Virus record (IMG/VR): IMGVR_UViG_3300043449_002710
Location: 62,001-126,000 of that record
Direction: 5' to 3' (one strand)
DNA: 64,000 bases
The position numbers and the translations under genes are program-made. Shown in pieces: positions 8,365 through 58,607 of this stretch; the first letter of the stretch is position 1; each line of letters opens with the position of its first letter. The notes below the pieces were generated by a model. The model searched no databases. It was given only the letters and a program-made list of their open reading frames with translations, and was not told the DNA's origin.

Positions 8365-8543
8365 GGCGCGTTTCTAACATCAAAGAATTAGTATTCAAAA
8401 TACAATTCCCATAAAAAATACAAAACTAAACTAGACAGTAAAAGGAACATACAGTCTTGTTTGTCCAAGCCTAAGAGCAACATTAACTGAGAATAACCTG
8501 TCTTTGTTCTTAGGTTATTTTAAGAATCAGGGAGATCCTACCG

Positions 8544-9392
8544 ATGGTCAAATTTTATACTCTCCACAATGCGGCTGGTTTAATTCGTTCTAACAAGTTT
8601 CACGACAAGGCAGACGCCGTCTGTGTGGGCTCTTTTAGAGCAGAGTATTTGAACTTTCCGATCAAAATCTATGAGCATAAAGACGATGAAAAAACCTGTG
8701 TCTTGGTCTGTAACCCAGATGGCTCGGTAGAAAAACCCAAAGCTTGGGGAACGGAGATTCATGACCTAGGCAATGCGACCTCGGGCGTTTCAAATCGAGA
8801 AGCCGCGCACATTCTTCTTTCGGCCTTTGATGAACAGCCGATCACTACTTTCAATTTGAAAGCTCAGATCACTGAAGCTCAAGTCTCCGAATTGGAAAAA
8901 GCCACTGGGTGTGACATTGGCATGACCGCATCGGATTCTTTCAACGCTTATACACAAGAACCCAAGACCATCCATGCGATCGAAACTCAGCTTGTGGAAT
9001 GGGGTTTGGAGCTTTATCGTGTGTCTGAAGCTACTGTGAAAAAGAACAAAGCACACGCTGCGATGGAAGCTTCCGAGATTGAGCCTGCGCTTGAAAAAGA
9101 ATTTGCTCAAGCTTCAACCGAAGTGACGGCAGCCCGCAAAGGACATATCGAAGCGAGAGCCTCCCGGTTACCCGAACTTCGTGTTCGCGCCACGATGAAA
9201 TTTGGCGGTGGTCTGAAGTTCACCGCTCATTGTGAAAAAATTCCAGCAGAAGGAAAGAAAGCCCCAGCGATTGCAGTTTACGTCGATGGGTCAAAAGTTG
9301 GAGAAGTCAAAGATGAGCGCGGAGCTGCTCGTTTGATTTCTGAACACGCTGAAAAAGCATTCGGCAAGTTCTTGAAGAAAGAATTAGCCTAA
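8544..9392 (+). CDS. hypothetical protein
   Basis: 282-aa ORF, GGGAG RBS, TTATTTTAA motif upstream. Confidence 0.7.
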   Translation: MVKFYTLHNAAGLIRSNKFHDKADAVCVGSFRAEYLNFPIKIYEHKDDEKTCVLVCNPDGSVEKPKAWGTEIHDLGNATSGVSNREAAHILLSAFDEQPITTFNLKAQITEAQVSELEKATGCDIGMTASDSFNAYTQEPKTIHAIETQLVEWGLELYRVSEATVKKNKAHAAMEASEIEPALEKEFAQASTEVTAARKGHIEARASRLPELRVRATMKFGGGLKFTAHCEKIPAEGKKAPAIAVYVDGSKVGEVKDERGAARLISEHAEKAFGKFLKKELA

Positions 9393-9411
9393 ATTTAGTT
9401 AAAAGGTCTGT

Positions 9412-9861
9412 ATGGCAATCTCAGTTATCGCGGCATTGACGGAACTTGGAAGGCACCATATCGCGGATATGACGATTAGCGGTCGGGGCTTTCAAATCAC
9501 AAAATTCGTGGTGGGCTCAGGTGGGCATGACTCGGGAGATCCCACGGTTCCGCTCACGCCTAGCCCTACGGTGATTGCCTTACCCGATCAGACCTTTGGA
9601 CCCAAACTCTTGGTTGTTCCTGCTGCGCCCTATACGGGAACTTTGGTGACTCCGTTTTGCCCTCAGTTCACGGCCTTGCTCGATTACACTGAAGCCAACG
9701 GGTCGATCTCCAACTACGGGTTGATTGCTCAGGTTGTGTATTCTCCAATCCCAGGCGATCCCCTTTTAGGAACAGAGTTTTTGTTTGCGCATGGAAACAC
9801 CCCTCTGAAGGAAAAAACGGATTCTGATCAGTTTCAGATCACCATCACGCTGCAGACTTAA
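9412..9861 (+). CDS. tail-collar/fibre attachment-like protein (DUF3751-like)
   Basis: LTELGR..IA...I.G..FQITKFVVGSGG N-terminus; paralogue of 17407..17877. Confidence 0.55.
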   Translation: MAISVIAALTELGRHHIADMTISGRGFQITKFVVGSGGHDSGDPTVPLTPSPTVIALPDQTFGPKLLVVPAAPYTGTLVTPFCPQFTALLDYTEANGSISNYGLIAQVVYSPIPGDPLLGTEFLFAHGNTPLKEKTDSDQFQITITLQT

Positions 9862-9872
9862 AAGGAATCACA

Positions 9873-12800
9873 ATGCTCAGGACGCTGCTACATTTCAGAA
9901 ATTTTGATTCCACTCAAGACCTGAACTCCACGTTATCAGGTTTTTTCAAACGCGGGATCGTGACTGGTGGGGAAGTATTTCCCGTCCCCGGTGTATTGGC
10001 CGTGGATATCGCACCGTTCAAGCTCATCGGGCAAGACGGGATGGTGGTTCTTGAAACGAGCAACCTGACTCGCGTCTCAGTCGTGGCCGGTCAGACCAAT
10101 GTCGTTGTGTTTAAATCCAAGTACATCCCAAACTCGGCTCCGATTGCACAATTTCAGGTTTTGGAACTATCCGCTTATCAAGCTGATCCGGAGATTGCTT
10201 ATTTAACTGTTTTTGCTATCTTGGATCTTCCACCTGGAATCACTCAAGTCATTTCTTCTCAGATTGATTATTCCTCTCGGGACGTAATCGACGCGGTTTG
10301 TAGAATGACATTGAGGGGGGTTTTAGCTTCGACAAGCTTTTTGCCCCCCATTCATAATCGCCCAGGCGATGCTTACATCATCAATCAGAATCCCCCAGGC
10401 CTGCACGTTTGGGATGGGGTGAACTGGATCAACATCACCGACACTTCCGCTTTGATGGCGCTTCTGACCGCGCATATTCAAAACGCTCGAACCAACGAAA
10501 AGCATCTCACCGATCAGGAAAAAGAAGCGGCAGCCGGGACCTCGGGTTCTCCTTCTGACACCAATCGTTACGTGACAGATTTGGATGCACGTATCCCCAC
10601 GATTTTTCAGACCCAAGCTTTGGTGGGATTCCCGGGTTCTCCCTCCACGATCAATCCTTTTATCACCTCAGATTATTTTTTAGCTCAGCCTCAATCTAAG
10701 CAATTCACCGCTGCGCAGACGGTGCCTTATATTGAGCTGTATCCGAATGACGGGCCTTTTTTCATCGGCCTTGAAGATGTCACTTCGGTTAAAAAATATT
10801 TTAAACTTTATCACGCGACCGAATCTCGTGAATACGTCAATAGCTTAGGCGAAGCCGTCACGATCTCGGCCATCCAAAAGACCAATGGCTTGCCTGTCGA
10901 TCCTCTTTCCGACCCCACTGACAACAATGGATTTTATGCGGGTCAGTTGAATCTGGTTCTGACAGGAACGGTGGATCTTCCGGTTCGAGTGGTCTATGGC
11001 CAGAAAAAACCGTTTGCCAATATTTTAGATCCTTCCAAGAATTTGTTTAAGGGATCTTTACTGGTTCCTCAACCGGCCTCGGCTGAAATGAGCCAAGAGC
11101 TTTTAGTTCGGTTGAAAGATATTTCAGGCCGCTTGTTTGATGACCCCATGCAAACAGGCGAGAGCAACGTGGAGTTGAAAGACTCTGTCGATTGGCTTGA
11201 TTTGAGATTCACTCAGCTTAAGCTCATTGAAAATACAGGCAACGCAACCCGGGTGAATGTGACAGGCGTGGATGTGAACATGCCTGACTCCAAGCTTGAG
11301 ATCTCGGTTTTAAAAAATCTCCAAATCAACTTCTCAGGCTGTGAGATTCAATTCTCGGGCGGTAGCGCTGGGAATATCTACGAGTCTGACGGCGTTACTC
11401 TTCTTTCCACTTTCGCGGCGGTTACTCCGCCTGTGGGCGAGTATCAGTATTATTCGGTCAGCTTGCTCCCAGGATCTGCGGATTCCACCAACAGGCTTTC
11501 TCTTCAAGTTATTGTGGAGGCGGCTACCGCAGCGGGGGCTTCTCTCAATGCAGCGCCTAGGGCTTCGTTCATTGCAGGTGGTTGCCAGATCGGACAATTC
11601 GCCGTTCACAACAATGCGGGCACTGTGGAGTTGGCTCAGATCCTTCAAAACGGAATCGGCTCAGGATACCCGGGTGGAATCCTAGAGGCTCAGCCTTATG
11701 ACATTCCGCCAGCCGATGGGTTTCAAGCGATCGTCGTTGAAAAGTTTGAGCAGATTCCAACCGATACCAATAGCGGCGTGAAATCAACCAACGCCACTTA
11801 TGATCCGCTCAATCAGCTCTATCAGATCTCTTATGATCGAACCCCGACGATCACGACTTACGGAATTGATTTTACTTTAAGCGGAGCACCTAGCTTTGAA
11901 TTGAAAGTTGGGGATGTGGTTTTTGCGGCTGGCGTGATCCGAAAGATCGTTAGCGTTGATCCTTCTCAGACCGCAGGTCAGTTAGATGCGGTTTTCTCTC
12001 CCGATCTTTTTGGCGCTTTCTGTATGTTGAGCCAAGGCGTTTGGACCAAGGACTTGGTCAACTATGGCAAAGTTTCAGATGGAAATCTTTTCAGCTCCAT
12101 CTTTGGAGCTACCACGATCTCTAAGATCAATGTCTCCTATTTGGATTCGAAAGCTGCAGGCGATCCGGTTTATGACATTCAGTCCACAGCTTTAGTGGTC
12201 TGTGCGGCTTCCAATAGCGGCTTGATTTCAGATATAACTGATCCCAACAGCACTACCTACTCGCCTTACTATCAGCGTCCTTATGGGATGAATCAGATTT
12301 ATGATTACCCGCTGATTGAGAACGCCACTTCGCAAAGACTGCATCTGGCGTTTTTCGCTAACCCAAGCATTGTCCCGGCTAGCGGCAGTTGTAACCTGCT
12401 TGAGTATCAGTGCTCATTGTATGTGGATACTTTGGTCTACAATGGCGGGTTACTCAACTCGGCTTACTGTTTATCCGATGGGAGCGGTATTTCCAACAAT
12501 TGCTTACCACCGACAGTAGTAGGCGGAAAAACAAGACTTCAGTTGAATTTCCCATACGTCTTGCAATCGAACCCAGGTCAAGTGGGCTGCGATTTGGAAG
12601 TTTATTTGGATGGAAAGAAGATCCCACGGTACTACTCAGGCCTGACGGGCGCGTACTGGAAGGAGATCTCGACCACTACTAACACGATCGAATTTCACAC
12701 CGATCTCTCAGCTTCGGCTACTCCGATTCAAGTGGAGCGCAGGCAAGGTTACAACGACAGCAGCTTAGTCAATTCGTTAAGACTTTCCGCTATGGCTGAC

Positions 12801-16103: not shown

Positions 16104-16136
16104 GACTGAATTGGTAAAATCTTAAAAGGAGCGGCT

Positions 16137-17380: not shown

Positions 17381-17406
17381 TCTTAATTCTCTATTATTTT
17401 TACTTC

Positions 17407-23571: not shown

Positions 23572-23600
23572 CTCAATAACCGTGTTATTTTTAATAAGTT

Positions 23601-26386: not shown

Positions 26387-26447
26387 TAAACTCTTGGAAC
26401 AAGAGTATTTTTAGGTTTGAGCGACCTATCAAGGATTGGGGAAAGTA

Positions 26448-31401: not shown

Positions 31402-31560
31402 ATTTAAAAATTAACCCGAAAAGCGACAGATTGTGAATTTGATGCCTTGCGTCGAGTAAATTCACTTGCTTGGGGCGGATTTCTTTCTTACGCTGACTTT
31501 CATAACAGGCCGCACTTAGGCATATCGCCGCATTTAGGCCGCAACAGAAAGGTCGGATTT

Positions 31561-38787: not shown

Positions 38788-38801
38788 ACGGTCTTATTTT
38801 T

Positions 38802-39200
38802 ATGGGTATGAAAAACAGAGCCTACTTAGCCATGGATTTGGATCGCTTGATTGAAGAGCATAAAAAACTGGTCAAAGATCTAGAATCGGCTGACGAGAAA
38901 GTTCTAAAAGATGAACTGACCGAACAGAAAAAAGAATTAGAGCACTATATCGATTTAAGGCGGCAGCACACGCATAGCGCCGAAGAAGTGTTTTCGGTTC
39001 TTGTTCAGAAAGTAAATCCAAAGACGCATCGCAGAGAATGGGCCTTGCTCTCCAAGAACAAGGACAAAGTGCTCAAGTGGTTCGGGGTGCAAAAACCTTC
39101 CGAAGAGACGGTTAAAAAAGAAGAGAAACGAGTTCAGTTCTGGAAAAGTCGTTCCCATCTTTACCCCACTTTAAGTCGATTGATGTCTGAAGTTTATTGA
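38802..39200 (+). CDS. conserved phage hypothetical protein
   Basis: W.LLSK...K.L.WF....E..K.E..VQFWK motif seen in large-phage proteins; TTATTTTTA upstream. Confidence 0.65.
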   Translation: MGMKNRAYLAMDLDRLIEEHKKLVKDLESADEKVLKDELTEQKKELEHYIDLRRQHTHSAEEVFSVLVQKVNPKTHRREWALLSKNKDKVLKWFGVQKPSEETVKKEEKRVQFWKSRSHLYPTLSRLMSEVY

Positions 39201-41163: not shown

Positions 41164-41266
41164 ATAATAATTACATCGATTTACCTGTCATTTGGAACGG
41201 TGATGGCACTAAATTCTGTGATTTACAGACCAATGTCAACATGACTAACCTGGACGTAAATGGTTT

Positions 41267-41545
41267 TCACTTCTCCTCCAGTTCGTCAGAACTGACCAGC
41301 GCGGCTCTGGCGTCTTTCAGCATGTTGTCGATTAAAAATCTGCCCATGTGAAATGCGACGATAGTGCGAATCGTGGGGTCAAACTCTTCAAGATTGCGTG
41401 GAGGACAAAAATCTTCGGAGTATGCGCGACGGTAATTTTTGAGATACTGAATGACTTCTTTTAAAGTTTCTGTACGTTCGCTCATTTCCCCTCCAGAGCT
41501 GATCGGCCCTTTTTTATTGTATGATTCCGCCTGCGCCTGTTCCAC
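41267..41545 (-). CDS. hypothetical protein
   Basis: GGAGGGG RBS before internal MSERTE start. Confidence 0.5.
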   Translation of the reverse strand: MEQAQAESYNKKGPISSGGEMSERTETLKEVIQYLKNYRRAYSEDFCPPRNLEEFDPTIRTIVAFHMGRFLIDNMLKDARAALVSSDELEEK

Positions 41546-42602: not shown

Positions 42603-43771
42603 TAAAAAGACCCTTTGAGAGGTGCCAAACGGGCTGCAAGCTGGGCGTAGGTCGCAACCCCGGTGATTGGGGCCCCAAACCCAACGGCAGTCTCAATCGA
42701 AAGCGCCTGGAGGGTTTGAATTAAGATATCCACTAATTCGACCGTATCGTTGCCTAGCGCCACCTTACTGCCTGTGAGTCTGAGCTTGGCTCCCGAGCCC
42801 TCTAAAAACGCCTCAGAGGCCGTAGCACGGTAGTTTCCTTCGACGGTTAGGGTAGAGTCTCCCCCCACGGTCGTTTCTTGATCCACGCCCACCTGAAAGC
42901 TCAAATCCCCATCTGGGATCTGAAGCTCATACCCCGTCTCTGCTGTCGAAGGTAAGGAGACAAGCCAGTTGCCGTTTTGGTCAATCGCTTGTTGAGCAAA
43001 TTCGTCGGTTGTTGTGTACCAAGTCTTCTGAGATCTCAGAGGGACGGATGTTGAGGAATGCAAAACTTCCACTCCAAGATCGTCGTAGACATGCCCTTCT
43101 TGGGATTTGAATAAAACGGCGGGGGCAGACCCTGCTGGGTTTTTCAACTGCAGGTAGTGCTCGGCCAAGAACTTCTTATTCTTCTGCGGGAAGAATTCAT
43201 CGATGGCTGAACTCCAGCGTTTGATCACCCCAAGTCTCTCTTCGTCACCCATTTGCCCGACATCGTGAAATAAAAGCTCGCGCTTGAAGGTGGGGGCAGA
43301 ATCACTTTTGCTTTGATTGTCACGAGAGAGCTGGCTTTTAATCGTGGCACCAGATCTCAAATCCAAGTGTCCTCGCTTGCTGAAATAAGCCAAAGCCCCA
43401 CCCGAGGAAGCCAGATCATGTTCACCGGGTTCTAGGGTCCGATAAAGATTCAGGCCTTTTGTATAGTCTTGGGATCTTTTCCCTGGGGACATCGGCATGG
43501 TCTTGATCGCTTCGGCTTGCCCGGTGTCGAATCGGTTTTGCATCAAAAAACGAGATCCGGTTTCGGGCACAGATCTGATCCAACTTGTCAGCCCCGTGAA
43601 GGGGTGCTGAATCGGCATTTTTCTTTCGCGAGTCGGACCAAAAGAAACCCCCATCTCATCCGCATCACTTTGAATGGAAACCACTAGGCCTTCAAAGGGA
43701 CCTAGTTTTCCTTGCTCATAAGCTTGGGTGCGGGCGGCTTCGCGTGACGCTATCTGGATTGGAGTTTCCAC
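42602..43771 (-). CDS. baseplate central spike / puncturing protein (gp5/gpV/Mu gp45-like)
   Basis: N-terminal G.VVSI...P...SWIRSVPE.GS OB-fold-like pattern; C-terminal VG.D..TTVGGD..LTVEGN beta-helix repeats. Confidence 0.65.
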   Translation of the reverse strand: METPIQIASREAARTQAYEQGKLGPFEGLVVSIQSDADEMGVSFGPTRERKMPIQHPFTGLTSWIRSVPETGSRFLMQNRFDTGQAEAIKTMPMSPGKRSQDYTKGLNLYRTLEPGEHDLASSGGALAYFSKRGHLDLRSGATIKSQLSRDNQSKSDSAPTFKRELLFHDVGQMGDEERLGVIKRWSSAIDEFFPQKNKKFLAEHYLQLKNPAGSAPAVLFKSQEGHVYDDLGVEVLHSSTSVPLRSQKTWYTTTDEFAQQAIDQNGNWLVSLPSTAETGYELQIPDGDLSFQVGVDQETTVGGDSTLTVEGNYRATASEAFLEGSGAKLRLTGSKVALGNDTVELVDILIQTLQALSIETAVGFGAPITGVATYAQLAARLAPLKGSF

Positions 43772-43866
43772 AGCAGAACCTTCTTAAAGTTAAAAAGCAG
43801 GGGTCTCATCCATGAGACCAAAGTCCTCCATGACTTCCTGCTCATTAAACAATAAACTTATATTTG

Positions 43867-43914
43867 ATTAAGCTTCTTCAAAGGGCTGTTATTAAGCTTC
43901 TTCAAAGGGCTGTT
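43867..43914. repeat. perfect 24-bp tandem duplication
   Basis: ATTAAGCTTCTTCAAAGGGCTGTT at 43867-43890 and 43891-43914. Confidence 0.95.
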
Positions 43915-44551
43915 CTGGTTGAGCGTGTAGCTCAGCTAATGCCGATTCTGCGAAGCTCCGAATCGTGGTTTCGTTTTTACATTGGCTAATGATAAAAGCG
44001 AAATCCGCTTCATTCAGGGCGGGCTTCATTCTTTTGAGCTGCAAGAGTGTATCTTTGGAAGACTTCTCTTTGGATTGGAAGGATACGATTAGGCCTTTTA
44101 CTTTCAAAGAGACCTCATCGGAATCGTCACTCTGATTGAGTACGTCTGCGGCTGAAAGAACCGGGCCTTGAGATTTTTTGTTCAAGCGCTCCATGGTATC
44201 TCTCACGGCATTGGAAGGAGCACTGTCCGAATAGACGGACATGGAAAGCGCTTTCATTTGCTCTTTGGCTTCCTTGGTATTCAACTGCTTCATAGCCGCT
44301 TCTGGATCGACCAAAAGCAAGGTCTGATTGAAAAGAAGGCGGCGGATGTCTGTGCTCTCGCGAATCGAATCGCTAGAAAACTGTGCCGAGACATTGATAG
44401 GAATATCGGTCGGAGGAATCTTGAGCGTCTGATTTCTTCCGTTTTTATCCTTCAAAGCGATAACCAGCAAAAGCTGGGTCTTCAGTGCGTTGTTTCTCAC
44501 GAACACAGGTTTTTTGTTATCGAGTAAATCGTCCAAATCGAGCTTTCTCAT
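43892..44551 (-). CDS. hypothetical protein
   Basis: 219-aa ORF, GGGGA RBS. Confidence 0.7.
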   Translation of the reverse strand: MRKLDLDDLLDNKKPVFVRNNALKTQLLLVIALKDKNGRNQTLKIPPTDIPINVSAQFSSDSIRESTDIRRLLFNQTLLLVDPEAAMKQLNTKEAKEQMKALSMSVYSDSAPSNAVRDTMERLNKKSQGPVLSAADVLNQSDDSDEVSLKVKGLIVSFQSKEKSSKDTLLQLKRMKPALNEADFAFIISQCKNETTIRSFAESALAELHAQPEQPFEEA

Positions 44552-44610
44552 TTAGTCCCCTTTTCAAATACAGTTTGAATTAGTTTTACTAATTCGAGTG
44601 TTATTTTTAA

Positions 44611-45435
44611 TTGGGGAGGCTTACCCTTATGGATTTACTCAAGAAAATGACCGAATTTTTCTCGGGTCTTTATCTGCAAGCAATCACCAAGCAAGAACCC
44701 GCGAGGCCAAATCCTGAAGTCACCCTCTCGGCTATTAGGGAAGCCATCGATCCCAAAGAAGCCCCTTTAGAAGTGATCGCTCAACCCCCAGTAGCTGAAG
44801 TCACAAAGCTCACCAATTTACCCGAACAAGTCTTGTGGTGCCCTTTTGCGGTGAAACGTAAAGAAGCGATGACCACTCGCGGCAAGTACAGAAAGGGCTA
44901 CCCTGAAGGGGCAATCGTTCACTTTACGAGCGGCTCATCGGCTGAAAGTTCCTTTCAGCATGGGTTGAGATCGGGGTATTGTTTTTTTGTCATTCATGAG
45001 GATGGAACGATCTGGCAATCTTTTCCATTAGACTCTTGGGGTTATCATGCGGGCGAATCCTTCCACCCTAAATTAGGCAACGGGGTATCTCGTTATCTAG
45101 TTGGGATTGAAATTTCAAATGCTGGGGTTTTGACAAAAAAACCAGACGGTACTTTTGAAACTTGGTTCGGAAGATTGATCCCATCTTCTCAGGTCAGGCA
45201 TATCCCTAAAAAAATGGAAAACATGCAGCCTGGATATTATGCAAGATACACAGAGAACCAAGAGCAGAGTTTAAGAAAATTGGTTCAATGGCTAAAGATG
45301 AACCACCCCACGGTTTTTGATTACTCTTTGGTTCTTGGGCACGATGAGGTTGCGCCACAAAGGAAATCAGATCCCGGTGGGGCTTTATCCGTCACCATGG
45401 TTGACTTCAGGGATTCTTTGAAAAAGAGCGTCTAA
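44611..45435 (+). CDS. N-acetylmuramoyl-L-alanine amidase (Amidase_2), probable endolysin
   Basis: IVHFT, FVI..DGTI.Q......YHAG, VGIE, LGH.EVAP.RK.DPG Zn-amidase motifs; likely start ATG 44629. Confidence 0.88.
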   Translation: MGRLTLMDLLKKMTEFFSGLYLQAITKQEPARPNPEVTLSAIREAIDPKEAPLEVIAQPPVAEVTKLTNLPEQVLWCPFAVKRKEAMTTRGKYRKGYPEGAIVHFTSGSSAESSFQHGLRSGYCFFVIHEDGTIWQSFPLDSWGYHAGESFHPKLGNGVSRYLVGIEISNAGVLTKKPDGTFETWFGRLIPSSQVRHIPKKMENMQPGYYARYTENQEQSLRKLVQWLKMNHPTVFDYSLVLGHDEVAPQRKSDPGGALSVTMVDFRDSLKKSV

Positions 45436-45741: not shown

Positions 45742-45854
45742 CCTTGGTAATTTAAAGGGAAAAGTAGAAATGGGAAGTTTCCATAGCCCTACGACCCTTA
45801 AGTAGAAAATAAGTGTGAAAATGTTGTACTTTTACGTCCCGAGAAGGAATAAAT

Positions 45855-47519: not shown

Positions 47520-47549
47520 AAAAGGAGGGGAGTTTCCTCCCCTCCTTTT
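47520..47549. terminator. bidirectional Rho-independent terminator
   Basis: AAAAGGAGGGGAG-TTTC-CTCCCCTCCTTTT perfect inverted repeat between convergent genes. Confidence 0.9.
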
Positions 47550-47562: not shown

Positions 47563-50535
47563 TTACTTCAAAGCTACGCCGGTTGAGAAGTCATTGCTGT
47601 TCAGAGCATAAAGTCCGAACAAGCGCTTGATGACGTTTCTCGAATACCAAGCATAGTTGAAGTAAAAGAGAGTCGGATCGTTCTTGTCTTGGAAGACAAT
47701 GATGTCCTTGGTCGGATCGAAGTTTCTGTCGTTTCCATCGGCGTCTTGATACTGCCCGATGAGACCGCGAGCCAGAAGACCCCTTAAGATCGAAGCCAAT
47801 TTGCCACGGACAATCGATTTGGCAGCCGTTCCAGAAGCCGGGGTGATGCCCACCAAAGAGGCCATTTCTCTCACCACAACTTTCGTGACAAAATGCCGCT
47901 GAGTCATGACCTGGATCAGGTTGAAGTCCTTGGCGGTATCGACCGTCATGTCTTCACCCCAAGTGTAAACGCCAGGGCTGCCATTGACGTAGTTGATCTG
48001 AGCTTGACCGAGAAGCATGATCTGATCTTTCCGATACATCTCAATCGTGTCAAAGCCGTTGACCAACTGACCTAAGAGGTCTGTAGCAGGGTCAGCGAAA
48101 CTTGCCACCCGAGCCGCACCCGCGAGAGCCACAAACGAACCGTCCAAAGTCACGGTCGTTGTCAGGCCGTTGTCGAGCACGATGGTCTTGGTAGCACGAG
48201 TCGGGGCCACCAAGATTCGAGAGCCGTGAGCAGCCGAATCGCCTGCCACCTGAAGGGTTTTGCGGGCTGTGAAGACCAGAGTGCCTTCGGTATTTTCGTC
48301 TCCGATCGGAGTGCCAATCGGCATACCGAACCAGACCAGATTCGGACGCTGTTCGAATGGATCGTTTCCAATCAGATTCTGATTGAGAACTTCAGACAGA
48401 GCCGCAGGGTAATTCAATAAGCACAGATCCGTAATCCGAGGATAGTTCTTGACCGATTGAACAGCGGCCACGAAATCGGGAATCGAGTACACACCAGAGC
48501 CATCTGTATTCTTAGGTTGAATCAGATAGACGCCTGGGGCGTTGTTGTTCCAAGCAATTTCGTTGCCGATATACAGGTCATTGTCCACAGCAGAAGGAGC
48601 CGCAAAATTACGACCGTCTTCCAAGCGGAGGACCAGATACGGGGTGTTGTAGAAAGACTCTGGACGTAAGAACAGAGTCGTCAGGTAATAAGCCTGACCT
48701 GGATCTGGCTCAGCGCCTTTGGAGGTGTAGGTCACTTTAACTGCAACAGCCGGATCTACTGTGAAGTAGACAAACGGAGTTCCAAACACCCAGTTGAAGC
48801 TGATCTCAGCGTTCGTGTTGTAATTCTTCACACGAATCGAATCATGGTCGGTCGGAACTTTGGAGAGGATCAAATAGCGTTGACCGGCTACTCCTGTGAT
48901 CTGACCGTTCATATCCGTCTTGTAATCGGTGAGCTGACGGATATCTTCAGTCTTGGCTTTCAAAGACCAATCCAAAACGTTGGAAATGAAGATCGCGTAC
49001 TCGAAGATATCGAGGGTAGCGTAGCTTTCCGTGTTTCTGAAAGCAATCGAGACGTTGTCTGGGAGCAAAGCGTAACCGTCTTTGCCAGCAACCAACGGAT
49101 CAAATTCAGCCGTGAAAGTTCCGAAGCGTCCTTCGGTGGTGCTTGTGGAGAAGCCACCGAACAAAGTGACTGCGTCACCCGCCACAATCGGAGCTTGCAG
49201 AGTGAGTTTGTACTCGCGAGCGTCTTTGGCTGTGTAGTAGATGCGAGGAGCCTTGGCGACGATCTCCCAGGTTGTTCCCACAGCAGCAGCCGTAGGGCCA
49301 ATCACGAAATCCAGCTTCACGCCGTCTACCAGTGTAGGCGAAAGGGAAACGAGGTTGTTTTCAGTGACGGTGAAAGAACCCGAGATCGGAAGAACGTCCC
49401 CGTAACGAGCCCAAACAAATTGCATCACCCGAGCCGGGGTCACGCCCGATACGCTCATGAGCTTGATGCGGTATTTGTTGTTCCGAGCGTGGGTGTAAAG
49501 AGCTTCAGGGTTGATCTGGATTCTGAAGTCGTTCTGAAAGCCACCGACGACATAAGGGGTTTCAATGGTGGCGAACTGAGCATTGCCGTAGCGGCTGTCG
49601 ATTTCGACCATGCCTGGGCCGTGCGCTGTTACAACAAACGAGTCACCTGCGACAAAGTTTGCACCGTTGAAATTGAAATCCAAAGCTAAGCCAAATTCCA
49701 AAGCCCCTGACAGCGAACCCGTTTCATTGATGGTGAAAGTCGGGAAAGTGTCGAGTGCAGCAAGCGGAACCGGAGGAGCGGCATAGTTACCACCCGAAAG
49801 GGGTGTTGCAGTCCAGTGGAAAGTAGCGGTACGAGAACCCACAGCGCCCGAAGCGCTTGTGCAGGTCACCGTGTATTTTCTAGAATAAGCGTGAACAAAG
49901 CTTGCTGTTGGAGAAACCAGAGCAGAGCCTGTGGAGCCCGGCTGCAAAGTCGCGGCCACGGTTCCGAAGTAAGCTGCCGGATGTACGTTGGCGGCGTCCG
50001 CAGTCACTGGGCTGAAAGAAGCCGGGACAAAGTAATCTTTGTATTCTGTGTATTGGCTTGAATCCAACTGATTGCCAATGAACCGGATCTGACGGATCTC
50101 AGAAACCGGGATCGGGTCCTGAACCGCACGATCATTCGATTGGTAATCGAGGTAGTAGGTCGCCAATGCGTCAAACGACTCATCTCGAATCTGAATCGAG
50201 AGGTATTTGCCGCCTGTTGAAAGATACTGCCACTCTTCTTGGCGAAGCTCGGTGCCGTCTTGTTTGAACAAGCGGTTGGGCTTCAGCTTTGCGCCTGTGG
50301 CTTCGTGGAGCAGCAGAGCGACATAAGGGGCGGAGTTAGAAAACGTCAACTGCTCGCCTTGGATGAAGGCCCTGATGATCGGGCTGTTTTTAGCTACAGC
50401 TAAACGAGATCCCTTGGCGATGATGGCCGGGATACGGGCATCAGCGGAAAGATTCGTGCTTTCAGGGTTCAGAATCTGCCCCACATAAGCGCCCGGTTCA
50501 GTGTAACGGGATGTTGTTAATGTCAAATTAGCCAT
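47563..50535 (-). CDS. tail sheath protein
   Basis: EPGAYVGQI N-terminus; C-terminal DGSFVA.A.AA, L....V.GF, GV..WGED.T, IQVM...FV...R sheath domain; 990 aa. Confidence 0.88.
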   Translation of the reverse strand: MANLTLTTSRYTEPGAYVGQILNPESTNLSADARIPAIIAKGSRLAVAKNSPIIRAFIQGEQLTFSNSAPYVALLLHEATGAKLKPNRLFKQDGTELRQEEWQYLSTGGKYLSIQIRDESFDALATYYLDYQSNDRAVQDPIPVSEIRQIRFIGNQLDSSQYTEYKDYFVPASFSPVTADAANVHPAAYFGTVAATLQPGSTGSALVSPTASFVHAYSRKYTVTCTSASGAVGSRTATFHWTATPLSGGNYAAPPVPLAALDTFPTFTINETGSLSGALEFGLALDFNFNGANFVAGDSFVVTAHGPGMVEIDSRYGNAQFATIETPYVVGGFQNDFRIQINPEALYTHARNNKYRIKLMSVSGVTPARVMQFVWARYGDVLPISGSFTVTENNLVSLSPTLVDGVKLDFVIGPTAAAVGTTWEIVAKAPRIYYTAKDAREYKLTLQAPIVAGDAVTLFGGFSTSTTEGRFGTFTAEFDPLVAGKDGYALLPDNVSIAFRNTESYATLDIFEYAIFISNVLDWSLKAKTEDIRQLTDYKTDMNGQITGVAGQRYLILSKVPTDHDSIRVKNYNTNAEISFNWVFGTPFVYFTVDPAVAVKVTYTSKGAEPDPGQAYYLTTLFLRPESFYNTPYLVLRLEDGRNFAAPSAVDNDLYIGNEIAWNNNAPGVYLIQPKNTDGSGVYSIPDFVAAVQSVKNYPRITDLCLLNYPAALSEVLNQNLIGNDPFEQRPNLVWFGMPIGTPIGDENTEGTLVFTARKTLQVAGDSAAHGSRILVAPTRATKTIVLDNGLTTTVTLDGSFVALAGAARVASFADPATDLLGQLVNGFDTIEMYRKDQIMLLGQAQINYVNGSPGVYTWGEDMTVDTAKDFNLIQVMTQRHFVTKVVVREMASLVGITPASGTAAKSIVRGKLASILRGLLARGLIGQYQDADGNDRNFDPTKDIIVFQDKNDPTLFYFNYAWYSRNVIKRLFGLYALNSNDFSTGVALK

Positions 50536-50624
50536 CGGATCTCTCCCTCAATACCTTTTTGAAGAAACTTTCTCTCTCTCTTAAAATAATGCAGATTTAA
50601 GAGTACCTAAAATTTTCTAATAAC

Positions 50625-51712: not shown

Positions 51713-51787
51713 GAATAGAAAATAACTCGAACTGAACTTATTTTAAGAAAGGAGCAAAGGAAGGCTCCCAGAAAGCAGAAATGACCG

Positions 51788-53819: not shown

Positions 53820-55583
53820 ATGTTATTTGAAGATGCTTTAAGAGTTGCAAAAACTGCTGGATTGAAAGTTCTAGAAACTGGGCTTGTCAATTCTGCAAAA
53901 AGACAACTGATCGATGTTGTCTGTAAGGCTGGGCACTCACGTAGAATGCCTCGCAATAAATTCAGCAACAGACCCCCTCAAAATTGTCCTGTTTGTTTAA
54001 AAGAACAAGGCCCTGATCTGGATAAAATTCTAACTGATCCTAAAATCAAAACTAGGTTAGATGAGGGGTATCATCTCAAAAAAGCTTTTTCCGAAGATCA
54101 TGAAATCCAGTTAGAAGTTGTCTGCCCACAAGGTCACACCTATTCTATTGCTAAATGGAAATTTACTAAAGGGACTCAATGCGGCTCTTGCTCAGGTAAG
54201 AATCGGGACCTTACTTTTTTTAACATCAAGCAAGAAATGGAAGCCGAGGGTTTTGAAGTTTTATCGAAGGAATATCAAAATCAGTATCAAAAGCTCCATC
54301 TGATTGACCCTGACGGTAACGAACAATGGATCTCGGCAGATTCTTGGAAACGCGGTTATAGGTCAGAGCGAGGACCGACTCAGCAGACTAGAGACCGCAC
54401 AATCGAAGAAGTAAAAAAAGATTTTGAAGCCGAAGGCTATCAGCTTTTGGAAACCAAATTTATCAATGTTAAAACTAAAATGAGAGCAGTATGCCCTAAA
54501 GGGCATGAGTTTCGAGTGCATTGGAATCATTGGAAAGATGCTGGCGTTAGGTGCTCGGTTTGTTTTGGCACCCCTATGATGACTTTAAAAGAAATTCAAG
54601 AGCATCCAGAAACTATCCAATCTGGTTACCAAGCCTTACGCCGAGAGCGGATTGGTGCTCGTTTGGGTTGCGTTTTTTTATGTCCAAAAGGTCATGAATG
54701 GACTTCCACTCTCCCAGATTTTTTTTCAAAAAAATACCGATGTTCCTCTTGTAACCCGAAGTCTAGCTTGGCGGAATTGGAATTCCTAGAAGAAGTGAAG
54801 AAAACATATCCATCGGCAAGAAAAAGTTTGGATTTCGGTTTTGAAATCGACATCTACATTCCCGAGTTAAAATTAGGAATTGAGTATTGTGGTCTTTATT
54901 GGCATTGCGAAAAAGAAAAACAACCTAATGCACATAAGGACAAGTTTTTAAAAGCTCAAAAAAATGGAATCAAGCTGTTGACCATTTTTGAAGACGAGTG
55001 GTTTTATAAAAAAGAAATTGTCTTGCGAAGAATCTTGAGATCCAAAAAGATCTCGGCTCGCGAAACTCAATTCAAAGAGATATCTAAAGTGGAGGCAGAT
55101 AAATTTTTTGAGGAGAATCATCTTCAAGGAAAATCAGCTACTACAACAAAACAGCATTTTGGTCTTTTTTATCTAGGGTCTTTAGTTGGTGCTATTGCGT
55201 ATGGACCCCACCATAGAAAGGATACGGGAGAATGGGTGCTAAGCCGACTTTGTTTTGGAGAATTTGATATTGTCGGGGGTACGGAAAAGTTATTCAAAAA
55301 CAGTCTGCGTTATTTACCTAAAGTCAAACTAATCTCATGGTCCGACAACAGGTATTCTAACGGGTCAGTCTATGCGAGACTAGGTTTTATCAAAGAGGAG
55401 GATTTAGGTCCCGATTACTCTTATGTGAAACCTGGGCATTCCCCAATTCGGGTTTCCAAGCAATCCATGAAAAAAACCAAAGAAGAGCAAGCATCAGGGA
55501 AAACCGAGCACGAACTCCGATTAGCGCAGGATTGGTACAGGATCTACGACTGCGGCAAAATCCGGTGGGCTTACCCACGCTGA
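53820..55583 (+). CDS. putative free-standing homing endonuclease (Hef-like), paralogue of 45855..47519
   Basis: Four intact and one degenerate CP.GH...C..C repeats; SLAE.E, FEIDIYIPELKLGIEYCGLYWH; SWSDNRYS.GSVY..LGF..PDY...YDCG. Confidence 0.75.
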   Translation: MLFEDALRVAKTAGLKVLETGLVNSAKRQLIDVVCKAGHSRRMPRNKFSNRPPQNCPVCLKEQGPDLDKILTDPKIKTRLDEGYHLKKAFSEDHEIQLEVVCPQGHTYSIAKWKFTKGTQCGSCSGKNRDLTFFNIKQEMEAEGFEVLSKEYQNQYQKLHLIDPDGNEQWISADSWKRGYRSERGPTQQTRDRTIEEVKKDFEAEGYQLLETKFINVKTKMRAVCPKGHEFRVHWNHWKDAGVRCSVCFGTPMMTLKEIQEHPETIQSGYQALRRERIGARLGCVFLCPKGHEWTSTLPDFFSKKYRCSSCNPKSSLAELEFLEEVKKTYPSARKSLDFGFEIDIYIPELKLGIEYCGLYWHCEKEKQPNAHKDKFLKAQKNGIKLLTIFEDEWFYKKEIVLRRILRSKKISARETQFKEISKVEADKFFEENHLQGKSATTTKQHFGLFYLGSLVGAIAYGPHHRKDTGEWVLSRLCFGEFDIVGGTEKLFKNSLRYLPKVKLISWSDNRYSNGSVYARLGFIKEEDLGPDYSYVKPGHSPIRVSKQSMKKTKEEQASGKTEHELRLAQDWYRIYDCGKIRWAYPR

Positions 55584-55794: not shown

Positions 55795-55894
55795 GAGAGC
55801 CGCTCGTAAAATAATATAGAAAATTCTTGAGAAGATTTCAAAGATTCTATAGTTTTTCTAAATAACATTATTTTCATAGCAGGTGTGAGCCCAA

Positions 55895-57264: not shown

Positions 57265-57303
57265 ACTTGAGTTATTTTTAAGGGGCTGACTTGAGGACAA
57301 AAC

Positions 57304-57633: not shown

Positions 57634-57795
57634 CTACTACCGCAAGGGTTCCTGGGATGACCCCAGGAACCCTGATAATTAGAGAGAGAGGAGTAGTATG
57701 CGAAGATGGTGCAAAAGATAAGCCCAACGCACAAGGGTCCCCCAAGCTAGCGGTCTGACTAAATACAATTTCTATTCCGACTTATTTTTTATAGT

Positions 57796-57972
57796 ATGCG
57801 TATTCAAATTTGCCCAGAATGCCATGTCGCTTTATTAGAGCCCTACCCGCATCGGCAAACTTTGCCGCCTTGGATGAAATGCCCGTGCTGCGGGTACACT
57901 GAGGCCGCGCAAGAACGAGAAGCGGCAGAATCAGATCTGAATTCAAGAGAGTCTAAAAATAGACCTGGGTGA
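57796..57972 (+). CDS. small Zn-ribbon protein, 58 aa (not in ORF track)
   Basis: My translation: MRIQICPECHVALLEPYPHRQTLPPWMKCPCCGYTE...; TTATTTTTTA just upstream. Confidence 0.6.
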   Translation: MRIQICPECHVALLEPYPHRQTLPPWMKCPCCGYTEAAQEREAAESDLNSRESKNRPG

Positions 57973-57974
57973 GG

Positions 57975-58139
57975 TTAATTTTTTGTGCAGTTGCAATAAC
58001 AGCATTTAAACCCGAAGTCGTTTGAGTTCTTGCAGACTTCACAGACCCACTTTGAAAACAAAGGATCGATTTCCACCTGACACTTAGGACGATTTGAAAA
58101 TTCTTTTTGGCTGTCGTCGGTGATTAGCTCAGGTTTCAT
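57975..58139 (-). CDS. small RanBP2-like Zn-finger protein, 54 aa (not in ORF track)
   Basis: My translation ends KWVCEVCKNSNDFGFKCCYCNCTKN. Confidence 0.55.
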   Translation of the reverse strand: MKPELITDDSQKEFSNRPKCQVEIDPLFSKWVCEVCKNSNDFGFKCCYCNCTKN

Positions 58140-58277
58140 CTTTTCATCTTTTTTCTTTTCCTGTAGTTCGAGGATCGGAATGCCTCACATCTTTTACAGA
58201 TCTGTGCCCCGGTCTTCGTATGCCTTCTGATGTTGTTCTCTAAAAGAGCGTGCCCTCTTTTACAGAATTCGCGTTCT

Positions 58278-58526
58278 TTAATCGGAGATTTCTCGGACAC
58301 GATAAGAAGTTTTCCTTTCAGACTGAACCAAAAATTTCCGAGGCGTGTCGTGCTTAGTATCTTTTAACCAGATCCCGCGTTCCGATCTGAAGTCGGTCGC
58401 TAAAAGATCCAAGGTGTGGCTCTCCATAATTTCCTGGGCGGTTTGATGATAACCGTAAGGGGACTGCCAAAGCTTGGCTTTCTCGGATTCCCACTCCCCG
58501 AAACAATAAAGATATTGAAATCTCAT
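58278..58526 (-). CDS. hypothetical protein
   Basis: 82-aa ORF, GGGGA RBS. Confidence 0.5.
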   Translation of the reverse strand: MRFQYLYCFGEWESEKAKLWQSPYGYHQTAQEIMESHTLDLLATDFRSERGIWLKDTKHDTPRKFLVQSERKTSYRVREISD

Positions 58527-58607
58527 GGTTCCCCTGAATCTAAAATGTGTTTTAGGCTGAAAAGCTTATTTCAAATAAGCTTTGATGACTAGGTTATTTT
58601 TTAGGGG

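What the first reader, a model, noticed from the sequence alone, without database searches (positions are those of the whole stretch)
8515..58603. Recurrent TTATTTT(T)A motif a few bases upstream of start codons: candidate phage promoter
Seen on + at 8515, 17394, 23585, 26406 (TATTTTTA), 38794, 44601, 51738, 57272, 57782 and 58594. Seen on - at 50581-50589 (sheath), 55807-55814 and 51718-51725 (variant). TTATTGTT variants precede the minus-strand genes starting at 1749, 63750 and near 43771. Several downstream genes (17407, 23601, 57796) have no Shine-Dalgarno and start 4-8 nt after the motif, suggesting leaderless or short-leader mRNAs. Established: T4-like late promoters are short -10-only AT-rich elements. 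Inference: a phage-sigma or phage-RNAP promoter. Caveat: intergenic DNA is AT-rich and the motif also occurs inside a CDS (10673).
Basis: partly seen in the sequence, partly recalled or inferred. Interest (0 to 1): 0.65.

Follow-up and report, generated by a model that had tools for sequence, protein, structure and literature searches.

The report
Jumbo-phage late promoter, often leaderless
The recurring TTATTTT(T)A word is a real, directional signal in front of genes of an uncultured 223-kb freshwater jumbo phage. It is most likely a single-element (-10-only) promoter read by host RNA polymerase carrying the phage's own sigma factor, and in about a third of cases it sits so close to the ATG that the mRNA would have almost no leader.

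Summary
The window is part of a 223,260-bp virus record. TTATTTT is the commonest A/T-only 7-mer in its intergenic gaps (47 observed, 10.5±3.5 expected). 44 of those 47 point at the 5' end of the next gene. There is no conserved sequence further upstream, so no -35 element.

The distance from the first T to the start codon is bimodal. Sixteen sites lie 12-16 nt away; all have ATG and none has a properly spaced Shine-Dalgarno (SD). Sites 20 nt or more away mostly carry a GGAG-type SD.

Eight related phage contigs (40-57% GC) keep the element at orthologous places. The leader there switches between about 0-2 nt without SD and 11-15 nt with SD, which argues for a promoter and against a ribosome site.

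The genome has no detectable RNA polymerase and no gp55-like sigma. It has one diverged RpoD-like sigma with regions 2 and 3 and a degenerate region 4. That gene sits just upstream of the terminase/portal operons and carries one copy of the motif in its last codons.

Genes downstream include a sheath-like protein, endolysin, the baseplate-J operon, terminase and portal. No RNA data exist, so start sites and the sigma-motif pairing are inferred. This is a new member of a known kind; the closest analogues are T4 late promoters and the leaderless transcripts of Thermus phages.

The parts
4488..4496 (+). Variant element TTAGTTTTA, first T 14 nt before ATG 4502. It heads the gene 4502-4939, which is followed by the baseplate-J-like gene 4943-6355. 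No SD.
   Evidence: Baseplate_J Pfam hit. The same T-to-G variant at position 4 occurs at orthologous sites in relatives.
8515..8523 (+). TTATTTTAA, 29 nt before ATG 8544 (282 aa), with GGGAG between them. Leadered type.
17394..17402 (+). TTATTTTTA, 13 nt before ATG 17407 (156 aa), no SD. Leaderless geometry.
23585..23593 (+). TTATTTTTA, 16 nt before ATG 23601 (178 aa), no SD. Short-leader geometry.
26405..26413 (+). Weak variant GTATTTTTA ahead of the 872-aa gene (TTG 26436 or ATG 26454). Uncertain member.
   Evidence: not recovered by the strict pattern scans
31406..31414 (-). Variant TTAATTTTT, 13 nt before ATG 31401 (gene 31168-31401, 77 aa), no SD.
38794..38802 (+). TTATTTTTA, 14 nt before ATG 38808 (an in-frame ATG also lies at 38802), no SD.
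44601..44609 (+). TTATTTTTA, 28 nt before ATG 44629 of the amidase/endolysin gene (to 45435), with GGGGAGG between them.
   Evidence: PHROG amidase/endolysin; Amidase_2; called start
45804..45812 (-). TTATTTTCT, 71 nt before ATG 45741 (101 aa). Candidate with a long leader.
50581..50589 (-). TTATTTTAA, 54 nt before ATG 50535 of the 990-aa sheath-like gene, with GAGGGAG near the start.
   Evidence: sheath-like by ESM Atlas features and structure
51717..51725 (-). TTATTTTCT, 13 nt before ATG 51712 (111 aa), no SD. It lies back to back with the site at 51738 in a 75-nt gap.
51738..51746 (+). TTATTTTAA pointing rightwards. The downstream ORF is uncertain (GTG 51788, 78 aa, not called by the public gene caller).
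55806..55814 (-). TTATTTTAC, 20 nt before ATG 55794 (69 aa). A sigma70-like TTGAAA-N17-TATATT overlaps it.
55868..55876 (+). TTATTTTCA, 27 nt before the called GTG 55895 (97 aa). Divergent partner of the site at 55806.
57272..57280 (+). TTATTTTTA, 32 nt before ATG 57304 (109 aa), with GAGG between them.
57782..57790 (+). TTATTTTTT, 14 nt before ATG 57796 (58-aa ORF, MRIQICPECH..., not called by the public gene caller), no SD.
58594..58602 (+). TTATTTTTT, 14 nt before ATG 58608 (112 aa), no properly spaced SD.
63755..63763 (-). Variant TTATTGTTA, 13 nt before ATG 63750 (123 aa), no SD.

Best explanation
TTATTTT(T)(A/T), consensus (G)-T-T-A-n-T-y-T-T-A, is the core and only conserved element of a phage-specific promoter class. 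It runs the late genes: packaging, head, tail and lysis genes, plus several of unknown function.

Read as a sigma70-family -10 element, it is T(-13) T(-12) A(-11) n T y T(-7). The positions that never vary among orthologous copies (T-12, A-11, T-7) are the ones every sigma70-family region 2 reads (TAnnnT). No -35 partner exists.

The proposed cascade runs as follows:
1. Host RNA polymerase first transcribes early genes from sigma70-like promoters.
2. The phage's single, diverged RpoD-like sigma (genome 147,720-149,018, outside the window) is expressed from a different element, TTGGTAAAA.
3. That sigma then redirects host core polymerase to TTATTTTTA.

Initiation about 6-7 nt after the last conserved T falls on or 1-3 nt before the A of ATG at about a third of the sites. 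Those mRNAs would be leaderless or near-leaderless; all have ATG and none has a usable SD. At the other sites the leader is 10-40 nt and carries a normal SD.

Shown: the enrichment, the orientation, the geometry, the conservation, the presence of the sigma, and no detectable phage RNAP or gp55-like sigma in an 81%-complete record. Inferred: that the element is a promoter, where transcription starts, which sigma reads it, and the late timing.
For: 1. Enrichment and direction. TTATTTT occurs 47 times in gaps against 10.5±3.5 expected, and 44 of 47 point at a 5' end although only 58% of gap strand-positions do. It is the top 7-mer of any composition 13-15 nt before ORF-opening ATGs.

2. Single element. 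There is no information content from -40 to -6 relative to the motif. G is mildly enriched just upstream (42% at the base before the motif) and 3-6 nt downstream of it.

3. Two leader classes. Sixteen sites have the first T 12-16 nt from the start; all have ATG and none has a properly spaced SD. Most sites with a 20-60 nt leader (11 of 20) carry a GGAG, GAGG or GGGG.

4. Comparative test in eight loci from related phages (sigma 42-73% identical, 40-57% GC):
- TTATTTTTA occurs 11 times against 0.99 expected in the seven sigma-flank loci (P about 1e-8).
- 18 of 31 TTATTTT copies lie 9-60 nt upstream of an independently called same-strand start, where only 3.4% of positions lie (p about 5e-19).
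- The degenerate motif peaks 13 nt upstream of independently called starts.
- Upstream of the 'MLTVKEL' gene all 8 genomes keep TTATTTT while the distance to the start varies from 13 to 28 nt. An SD appears only at 24 nt or more.
- At orthologous copies only positions 4, 6, 8 and 9 vary (TTAGTTTTA, TTACTTTTA, TTATTCTCA).

5. Divergent gaps carry back-to-back copies: window 51717/51738 and 55806/55868, and genome 213011/213018.

6. Polymerase and sigma inventory.
- No PF00623, PF00562 or PF00940 hit, and no DxDGD motif in ORFs of 300 aa or more.
- No gp55-like family.
- One sigma with Sigma70_r2, Sigma70_r3 and phrog_351, and no paralogue.
- No Sigma70_r4 hit on it even at E<=10.
- Its AlphaFold model lacks the first helix of the region-4 helix-turn-helix.
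- The whole chain matches RpoD by profile and by fold.

7. The sigma gene lies directly upstream of the terminase and portal operons in all relatives. Its last codons (..IFK*) encode one copy of the motif.

8. Downstream genes include a sheath-like protein, endolysin, the baseplate-J operon, TerL and portal. DNA polymerase and helicase have no copy directly upstream.

9. Sigma70-type two-hexamer promoters are not enriched in window 43-62 kb: 14 found against 18.7±4.0 expected.

10. Outgroup. Phage PaBG, the nearest isolate by portal protein (32% identity), has no ortholog of this sigma and no TTATTTTTA in 258 kb.

11. Precedent. In Thermus phages Lalka27a and YS40 all promoters share TANNNT with the start site 6 nt downstream, each temporal class has its own -10 consensus, and most transcripts are leaderless (bioRxiv 10.64898/2026.04.20.719267). 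Group 2 jumbo phages lack an RNAP and carry sigma factors (PMC7824862).
Against: - No transcript 5' ends are available; only one DNA run holds the sequence. The start site, the timing and leaderless translation are therefore inferred.
- The sigma-motif pairing rests on co-occurrence, synteny and elimination. The genome is only about 81% complete, so a second factor could lie in the missing part.
- A purine/G-rich stretch (AGGGG, AAGGG) follows the motif at most sites, including those abutting the ATG. It could be read as an SD with 0-1 nt spacing, or as part of a translation signal.
- Some downstream genes are not obviously late (PcfJ-like, nucleotidyltransferase-like). Most are of unknown function.
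- About half of all TTATTTT copies lie inside coding sequence, so the 7-mer alone is not sufficient.
- A few copies double as the T-tract of terminator hairpins, for example genome 48,821 and 49,916.
- One ortholog (L017) would need a GTG as the leaderless start.
Confidence: 0.65

Rival explanations
1. The element is a promoter, but the phage's RpoD-like sigma does not read it. It would instead be read by host holoenzyme, through the weak -10 TATTTT helped by a phage activator or sigma appropriator, or by an undetected minimal gp55-like sigma or novel RNAP encoded in the missing 19% of the genome or among the many unannotated ORFs.
For: The sigma-motif link is only correlative. The genome is estimated 81% complete. 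Most proteins have no family match. T4's gp55 and the crAss and phiKZ polymerases are notoriously hard to detect. TATTTT matches TATAAT at 4 of 6 positions, including A-11 and T-7.
Against: - gp55 profiles (phrog_234, phrog_12791), three RNAP Pfam families and a DxDGD scan were all negative.
- Clearly sigma70-like early promoters (TTGAyA-N16-TGATAATAT) exist and look different.
- The sigma and the motif co-occur in nine genomes and are both absent from PaBG.
- The sigma gene itself uses another element, as expected if it acts upstream of the TTATTTT class.
Confidence: 0.2
2. The element is not a promoter but an mRNA signal for translation. It would be an A/U-rich ribosome (protein S1) landing site or enhancer, like the T7 gene 10 epsilon sequence TTAACTTTA. 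With the adjacent purine run it would replace or boost an SD inside polycistronic transcripts.
For: It lies immediately upstream of start codons. A G-rich stretch follows it at most sites. Its form resembles the T7 epsilon enhancer (from my own knowledge, not tested here). Many copies lie inside long same-strand gene runs where a new promoter is not strictly required.
Against: - The distance to the start codon ranges from 12 to more than 50 nt. Among orthologs it shifts from 13 to 28 nt while the motif stays and a separate, normally spaced SD appears.
- At 12-16 nt the purine run abuts the ATG (0-1 nt spacing), which is too close for SD pairing.
- Sequence-specific invariance of T, A and T at the -12, -11 and -7 equivalents fits sigma region 2, not S1.
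- Back-to-back copies sit in divergent gaps, where two promoters are required.
- All short-distance starts are ATG, as leaderless initiation requires.
Confidence: 0.1
3. The element is a compositional by-product of AT-rich intergenic DNA, of terminator T-tracts, or an RNA-processing site, with no role in initiation.
For: Gaps have 40% GC against 46% genome-wide. A few copies follow GC-rich hairpins, at genome 48,821 and 49,916. Half of the copies are inside genes.
Against: - It is 4.5-fold over a Markov-1 model of the gaps themselves and ranks first among all 128 A/T-only 7-mers.
- Orientation is biased 44 to 3.
- The position is sharp, at 13-14 nt.
- It persists in relatives of 53-57% GC, where chance predicts 0.04-0.09 copies per locus.
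- No conserved hairpin lies upstream.
Confidence: 0.03

Closest known systems
Bacteriophage T4 late promoters (TATAAATA, read by gp55 with gp33 and the gp45 clamp)
   Same: A short AT-rich single element at about -13 to -6 with no -35 element. It lies upstream of virion, packaging and lysis genes. A phage-encoded sigma-family protein redirects host core polymerase. If TTATTTTTA is numbered -14 to -6 as for T4, +1 falls on the A of the ATG at the commonest spacing (14 nt).
   Different: The consensus differs (TTATTTTTA, not TATAAATA). No gp55-like protein was detected. The sigma here is a 432-aa RpoD-like protein with regions 2, 3 and a vestigial region 4. T4 late mRNAs have leaders with SD.
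Thermus phages phiYS40 and Lalka27a: class-specific -10 elements and leaderless transcripts (bioRxiv 10.64898/2026.04.20.719267)
   Same: All promoters share TANNNT with the start site 6 nt downstream. Temporal classes differ in the -10 consensus. Late promoters lack a -35. Most transcripts start at the A or G of the initiator codon.
   Different: There the start sites are mapped; here they are only inferred. The late consensus there is TAGGGT with a conserved C at -25, and the factor is unknown. The host there is a high-GC thermophile known for leaderless translation; here the host is unknown, the source is freshwater, and only about a third of the sites have the leaderless geometry.
RpoD-like sigma factors of group 2 jumbo phages (Iyer et al. 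2021, PMC7824862) and other phage sigmas with -10-only promoters (phiEco32 gp36; SPO1 gp28 and gp34, from my own knowledge)
   Same: A jumbo phage without its own RNAP that encodes a sigma to recruit host core polymerase. The portal is related to that of PaBG, which that paper places in subgroup 2.2.
   Different: No cultured phage has an ortholog of this sigma; the best phage hits are 28-33% identical over at most about half of its length. About 36 orthologs occur only in metagenome contigs. No promoter consensus has been reported for such sigmas, as far as the library search showed.
phiKZ/AR9 non-virion RNAP late promoters
   Same: Jumbo phage; short AT-rich late promoter close to the start site.
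   Different: Those need phage multisubunit RNAPs, and none is detectable here. AR9 leaders are 26-491 nt (PMC5312081).

Membership tests
sigma70-family -10 promoter element (TAnnnT) | T at -12, A at -11 and T at -7 on the non-template strand | tested here: met
   In TTATTTT, positions 2, 3 and 7 are invariant in the orthologous copies that fit the motif, while positions 4, 6, 8 and 9 vary (TTAGTTTTA, TTACTTTTA, TTATTCTCA).
sigma70-family -10 promoter element (TAnnnT) | Lies 6-8 nt upstream of a mapped primary transcript 5' end | not testable with these tools
   No RNA run holds the sequence. Only the geometry relative to ATG is known: a peak at 13-14 nt from the first T.
sigma70-family -10 promoter element (TAnnnT) | Directional, intergenic, upstream of genes, above compositional expectation | tested here: met
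   47 observed against 10.5 expected; 44 of 47 oriented towards a 5' end. In relatives, 18 of 31 copies lie in the 3.4% of positions that are upstream zones.
sigma70-family -10 promoter element (TAnnnT) | A cognate sigma factor is available | tested here: inconclusive
   One phage sigma with regions 2 and 3 is present and co-occurs with the motif. Binding and specificity were not tested.
T4-type late promoter system (gp55/gp33/gp45) | Consensus TATAAATA at -13 to -6 | tested here: not met
   The consensus is TTATTTTTA. TATAAATA-containing repeats exist, but in AT-rich gaps near replication genes, not before structural genes.
T4-type late promoter system (gp55/gp33/gp45) | gp55-like minimal sigma encoded by the phage | tested here: not met
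   phrog_234 and phrog_12791 (the families hit by T4 gp55) gave no match at E<=10. The genome is 81% complete.
T4-type late promoter system (gp55/gp33/gp45) | No -35 element | tested here: met
   Information content is 0.1 bit or less at all positions from -40 to -6.
Jumbo-phage multisubunit RNAP promoters (phiKZ, AR9) | Phage-encoded beta/beta'-like subunits | tested here: not met
   PF00623 and PF00562 gave no match while the controls matched in 14 of 14 genomes. No DxDGD motif was found.
Leaderless mRNA genes | Start codon at or within about 3 nt of the transcript 5' end; AUG preferred; no SD | tested here: inconclusive
   The sequence features are met: sixteen sites in the phage's own genome at 12-16 nt, all ATG and none with a usable SD, plus 13 independently called genes in relatives. 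The 5' end itself is unmapped.
Extended -10 promoters (TGnTATAAT) | TG at -15/-14 | tested here: not met
   There is only a partial G preference at the -14 equivalent (21 of 50) and no T preference at -15. In the HMM alignment the positions aligned with the region-3.0 stretch of RpoD that I take (from my own knowledge of E. coli numbering, H455/E458) to contact the TG are not conserved.
Primary (group 1) sigma factors | Region 4.2 helix-turn-helix that reads the -35 element | tested here: not met
   No Sigma70_r4 hit on the sigma even at E<=10. The model has helices 387-397 and 410-424 joined by a proline-rich loop where the first HTH helix should be. The profile alignment to RpoD region 4 is of low confidence.

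The most novel reading that the evidence does not exclude
A whole clade of uncultured freshwater jumbo phages, known from about 36 sigma orthologs and contigs of up to 250 kb, runs its late programme through an RpoD-derived sigma that has lost the -35-reading helix-turn-helix. This sigma would read a single 9-nt element placed so that a third or more of late mRNAs begin at or next to the AUG. Between orthologs the same gene switches freely between a leaderless form and an SD-leadered form. One promoter copy is written into the sigma gene's own last codons, which would couple sigma synthesis to the packaging operon. A second promoter-like class (GAATTnGTAAAA) with the same 13-15 nt geometry suggests that leaderless expression is a general strategy of these phages and says something about their unknown hosts.
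Probability: 0.45. Interest if true: 0.65.

Novelty: new member of a known kind. Interest (0 to 1): 0.55.

Why it matters
- It gives a testable transcription map for a phage lineage in which most genes have no recognisable function. About 50 predicted promoters define late transcription units.
- It pairs an orphan family of phage sigma factors with a candidate recognition sequence. This could be tested with purified components even though the host is unknown.
- It flags roughly 25 genes in this genome that standard gene callers miss or start wrongly because they lack a ribosome-binding site. The ORF at window 57796 was not called, and the L017 ortholog was started 85 nt too late.
- Widespread leaderless geometry may also narrow the host search towards bacteria that translate such mRNAs well.

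Tried and rejected
- Searching IMG/VR for relatives, with the baseplate-J protein and with the sigma alignment, found nothing. Relatives came only through the protein word search and exact-protein contig look-ups.
Only about 20 kb around each sigma gene could be compared, so the window's own sites could not be checked for orthologous conservation.
- The protein chosen to fetch window-syntenic loci (window 53820-55583) turned out to be a mobile Mom-domain/endonuclease-like gene and gave only two useful loci.
- There are no RNA runs.
- PHROG and Pfam scans left most motif-associated genes unnamed. Scanning 143 small proteins as one pseudo-alignment showed only the top 25 families and could not exclude a weak sigma hit. 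Direct gp55 family searches replaced it.
- An unconstrained PWM iteration drifted into coding T-rich words and was dropped.
- A Markov simulation timed out and was replaced by analytic expectations.
- Rejected readings: phiKZ-type RNAP promoters (no RNAP), T4 gp55 promoters (no gp55, different consensus) and a composition artefact.
- GCCCTGCGG words near ATGs are collagen-like coding repeats, and the G-run enrichment is a poly-G at the contig end.

Full report
WHAT THE WINDOW IS. The window is bases 62,001-126,000 of a single 223,260-bp virus record (IMG/VR, linear, CheckV about 81% complete, 46% GC). It is a myovirus-type jumbo phage.
- Terminase large subunit and portal lie at genome 149,931-153,035 and 155,288-157,543.
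- The window holds a baseplate-J-like gene (4943-6355), an amidase endolysin (44629-45435) and a 990-aa protein (47563-50535, minus strand). The last resembles tail sheaths by ESM Atlas features and structure.
- The nearest cultured relatives by portal are Pseudomonas phage PaBG and the Erwinia Y3 and Dickeya JA phages, at 32% identity.
- Most proteins match no family.
- The only public run that holds the sequence is a freshwater metagenome, DNA only.

CHECK OF THE OBSERVATION. In the window TTATTTTA occurs 8 times (3.2±1.7 in shuffles) and TTATTTTTA 6 times (1.04±0.96); none of 100 shuffles reached these counts.

Genome-wide the 7-nt core TTATTTT occurs 125 times on both strands. Non-coding gaps make up 14.4 kb (6.4% of the genome, 40% GC). 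In them TTATTTT is the most frequent of all 128 A/T-only 7-mers: 47 copies against 10.5±3.5 under a first-order Markov model of the gaps themselves (maximum 22 in 300 simulations).

Of the 47 copies, 44 point at the 5' end of the next gene and 3 at a 3' end, whereas 58% of gap strand-positions point at a 5' end.

A scan that assumes nothing about the motif gave the same answer. Among all 7-mers starting 13-15 nt upstream of any ATG that opens 60 codons or more, TTATTTT is first (15), followed by its own shifted versions. At a control offset no word exceeds 5.

ANATOMY. Aligning 50 oriented sites shows no information from -40 to -6 relative to the motif, so there is no second element. G is weakly preferred just upstream (21 of 50 at the base before the motif). 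T, then A, then A follow the core, and positions 10-13 are G-rich.

The distance from the first T to the start codon is bimodal:
- Sixteen sites at 12-16 nt (mode 14). Every one has ATG and none has a Shine-Dalgarno at usable spacing.
- The rest at 20 to about 70 nt. Most of those with 20-60 nt (11 of 20) have GGAG, GAGG or GGGG at normal spacing before the start.

In the window the short class comprises 4488, 17394, 23585, 31414(-), 38794, 51725(-), 57782, 58594 and 63763(-). The leadered class comprises 8515, 44601, 50589(-), 55814(-) and 57272.

Several short divergent gaps carry one copy on each strand pointing outwards: window 51717/51738 and 55806/55868, and genome 213,011/213,018. That is what two divergent promoters look like.

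About half of all copies lie inside coding sequence, so context matters. A few copies double as terminator T-tracts.

COMPARATIVE EVIDENCE. The phage's sigma factor has about 36 orthologs (42-73% identity) in metagenome assemblies, on contigs of up to 250 kb. I fetched about 20 kb around seven of them and one further syntenic locus (L014-L018, L021-L023; 40-57% GC). Synteny is conserved: sigma, a gene of about 250 aa, one of about 73 aa, terminase, one of about 113 aa, then portal.

In the seven sigma-flank loci:
- TTATTTTTA occurs 11 times against 0.99 expected (P about 1e-8).
- 18 of 31 TTATTTT copies lie 9-60 nt upstream of a same-strand start called by the public pipeline, a zone that holds 3.4% of positions (p about 5e-19).
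- The degenerate form TTAnTyT peaks 13 nt before those independently called starts, with a second cluster at 24-34 nt and almost nothing beyond 46 nt.

Four groups of orthologous genes keep the element.
- Upstream of the 'MLTVKEL' gene of about 165 aa, all eight genomes have TTATTTT. The distance to the start is 14, 16, 28, 24, 13, 25, 26 and 27 nt, and an AGGGG/GGAGG box is present only at 24 nt or more.
- The copy ahead of the gene after sigma lies inside the last codons of sigma. It reads TTATTTTTAA, TTACTTTTAA or TTAGTTTTAA, so the amino acids change (VIFK or ISFK) while T, T, A and the T-run stay.
- Ahead of the small gene before portal it is TTATTTTTA/T or TTATTCTCA, at 12-14 or 24 nt.

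Across these copies positions 2, 3 and 7 (and 1 and 5) do not vary, while positions 4, 6, 8 and 9 do. This is the TAnnnT pattern of sigma70-family -10 elements (T-12, A-11, T-7).

The leader length switches between orthologs while the motif is retained, and an SD is gained exactly when the leader is long enough to hold one. This is the strongest argument that transcription starts just downstream of the motif and that the motif is not itself the ribosome-binding site.

WHICH POLYMERASE.
- Pfam models for the catalytic domains of multisubunit RNAP (PF00623, PF00562) gave nothing, while the controls matched in 14 of 14 genomes.
- The T7-type model PF00940 gave nothing, but its control matched nowhere, so that result is uninformative.
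- No ORF of 300 aa or more has a DxDGD-type motif.
- The PHROG families that T4 gp55 belongs to gave nothing at E<=10.
- One gene (genome 147,720-149,018, 432 aa) has Sigma70_r2, Sigma70_r3 and phrog_351 'RNA polymerase sigma factor'. It has no paralogue.

A profile of its orthologs matches primary sigma factors in the PDB over regions 1.2 to 4 (E about 1e-26). Its AlphaFold model (mean pLDDT 74) matches full-length E. coli sigma70. No Sigma70_r4 match falls on it even at E<=10. In the model the C-terminus has helices 365-382, 387-397 and 410-424, with a proline-rich loop where the first helix of the 4.2 helix-turn-helix should be.

In the alignment, region 2.3/2.4 is diverged. RpoD has FSTYATWWIRQAI where the phage sigma has FSVVAKTWIKQSI; the residue numbering and roles are from my own knowledge of E. 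coli sigma70.

A sigma that keeps regions 2 and 3 but has a degenerate -35 reader fits a single-element promoter. The sigma gene itself is preceded by a different conserved element, T(T/A)GGTAAAA, 10-15 nt before its start in the phage's own genome and four relatives. This places sigma one step earlier in the cascade than the TTATTTT class. PaBG has no ortholog of this sigma and no TTATTTTTA in 258 kb. This outgroup is a single genome, so the co-occurrence is suggestive only.

MECHANISM PROPOSED.
1. Early genes use sigma70-like promoters (TTGAyA-N16-TGATAATAT and TATAAATATAAATA repeats in large AT-rich gaps).
2. Sigma and some other genes use GAATTnGTAAAA.
3. Sigma then directs host core polymerase to TTATTTTTA in front of packaging, head, tail, lysis and other genes.

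Numbering the motif as -13 to -7 (or -14 to -6 for the 9-mer, as for T4's TATAAATA) puts +1 at 13-14 nt from the first T. That is on the A of the ATG at the commonest spacings. Canonical two-hexamer promoters are not enriched in window 43-62 kb (14 found against 18.7±4.0 expected). DNA polymerase and helicase lack the element directly upstream.

Inferred, not shown: the start site, the timing, the sigma-promoter pairing and leaderless translation.

RIVALS.
- A promoter read by something other than this sigma (probability 0.2) cannot be excluded without biochemistry.
- A translational enhancer (0.1) is disfavoured by the variable distance, the separate SDs, the divergent pairs and the position-specific invariance. 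The G-rich run after the motif, which abuts the ATG in the short class, keeps it alive.
- Composition, a terminator by-product or an RNA-processing site (0.03) is contradicted by the statistics.

COMPARISON WITH WHAT IS KNOWN.
- It works like T4 late promoters: a single AT-rich element with no -35, before late genes, read through a phage sigma. It fails membership, because the consensus differs and there is no gp55.
- It works like the Thermus phages YS40 and Lalka27a. There all promoters share TANNNT, classes differ in the -10 consensus, and most transcripts are leaderless.
- Iyer et al. (PMC7824862) noted that group 2 jumbo phages lack an RNAP and carry minimal or RpoD-like sigmas.
- No paper in the library connects TTATTTTTA with a phage promoter.

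The finding is therefore a new member of a known kind. The consensus is new and belongs to an orphan sigma family in an uncultured clade. The predicted leaderless share is large, and the leader switches between forms across orthologs.

LIMITS. The genome is incomplete and the host is unknown. No RNA data exist. Relatives were visible only around the sigma gene, so the window's own sites could not be compared with orthologous sites. My gene starts come from a simple ORF model, although the public gene calls in relatives give the same geometry.

Noticed in passing
window 1759-1764(-), 16114-16119(+), 44584-44589(-), 63361-63366(-); also genome 147,705 (before the sigma gene): A second promoter-like class, GAATTnGTAAAA, has its G 13-15 nt before ATG, the same leaderless geometry, or lies further away with an SD. 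It precedes the sigma gene, where it is conserved in relatives as T(T/A)GGTAAAA.
   Followed up: partly
window 64-90 (both strands); genome 5,482, 7,284, 33,192, 59,930, 61,395, 143,288, 170,204, 217,803: TATAAATATAAATA repeats and near-consensus sigma70-type promoters (TTGAyA-N16-TGATAATAT) occur in large AT-rich gaps, mostly near replication-type genes. These are probably early promoters for the host's primary sigma.
   Followed up: partly
window 60048-63352 (-): A four-gene dTDP-sugar operon (RmlC-, RmlD-, RmlA- and RmlB-like Pfam hits) is carried by the phage.
   Followed up: no
window 53820-55583 (+): A 587-aa protein with a Mom domain has more than 100 scattered homologs carrying zinc-ribbon, endonuclease or HTH domains. 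It looks like a mobile or homing-type gene and is not syntenic between relatives.
   Followed up: partly
window 47563-50535 (-): The 990-aa protein has no Pfam or PHROG hit but is sheath-like by ESM Atlas features and structure (TM by target 0.62-0.82 to Phage_sheath clusters). A strong bidirectional terminator hairpin follows it at 47520-47549.
   Followed up: partly
window 57796-57972 (+); L017:3227 onward: ORFs with the leaderless geometry are missed or started too late by the public gene caller. The 58-aa zinc-ribbon-like ORF in the window is not called, and the MLTVKEL ortholog in L017 is called 85 nt downstream of its likely GTG.
   Followed up: partly
genome 16,323-30,859 (L004) and 40,945-45,039 (L005), outside the window: There are giant 1645-aa and 2451-aa proteins with GNAT, NUDIX and RNase T domains (polyvalent-protein type); the 2451-aa one has the motif 14 nt before its ATG. 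There is also a family A DNA polymerase interrupted by an intein with a LAGLIDADG domain.
   Followed up: no
genome 173,200-175,000 and 223,207-223,222, outside the window: Collagen-like (GCCCTGCGG, Gly-X-Y) coding repeats occur in two minus-strand genes. A 16-nt poly-G run lies at the very end of the contig and is probably an assembly artefact.
   Followed up: no
L001:2150-2180 (genome about 148,990-149,020): The last codons of the sigma gene (..V/S-I-F-K-stop; F and K nearly invariant in 34 orthologs) are also a copy of the promoter motif for the downstream packaging operon. The constraint on these bases may therefore be dual.
   Followed up: partly
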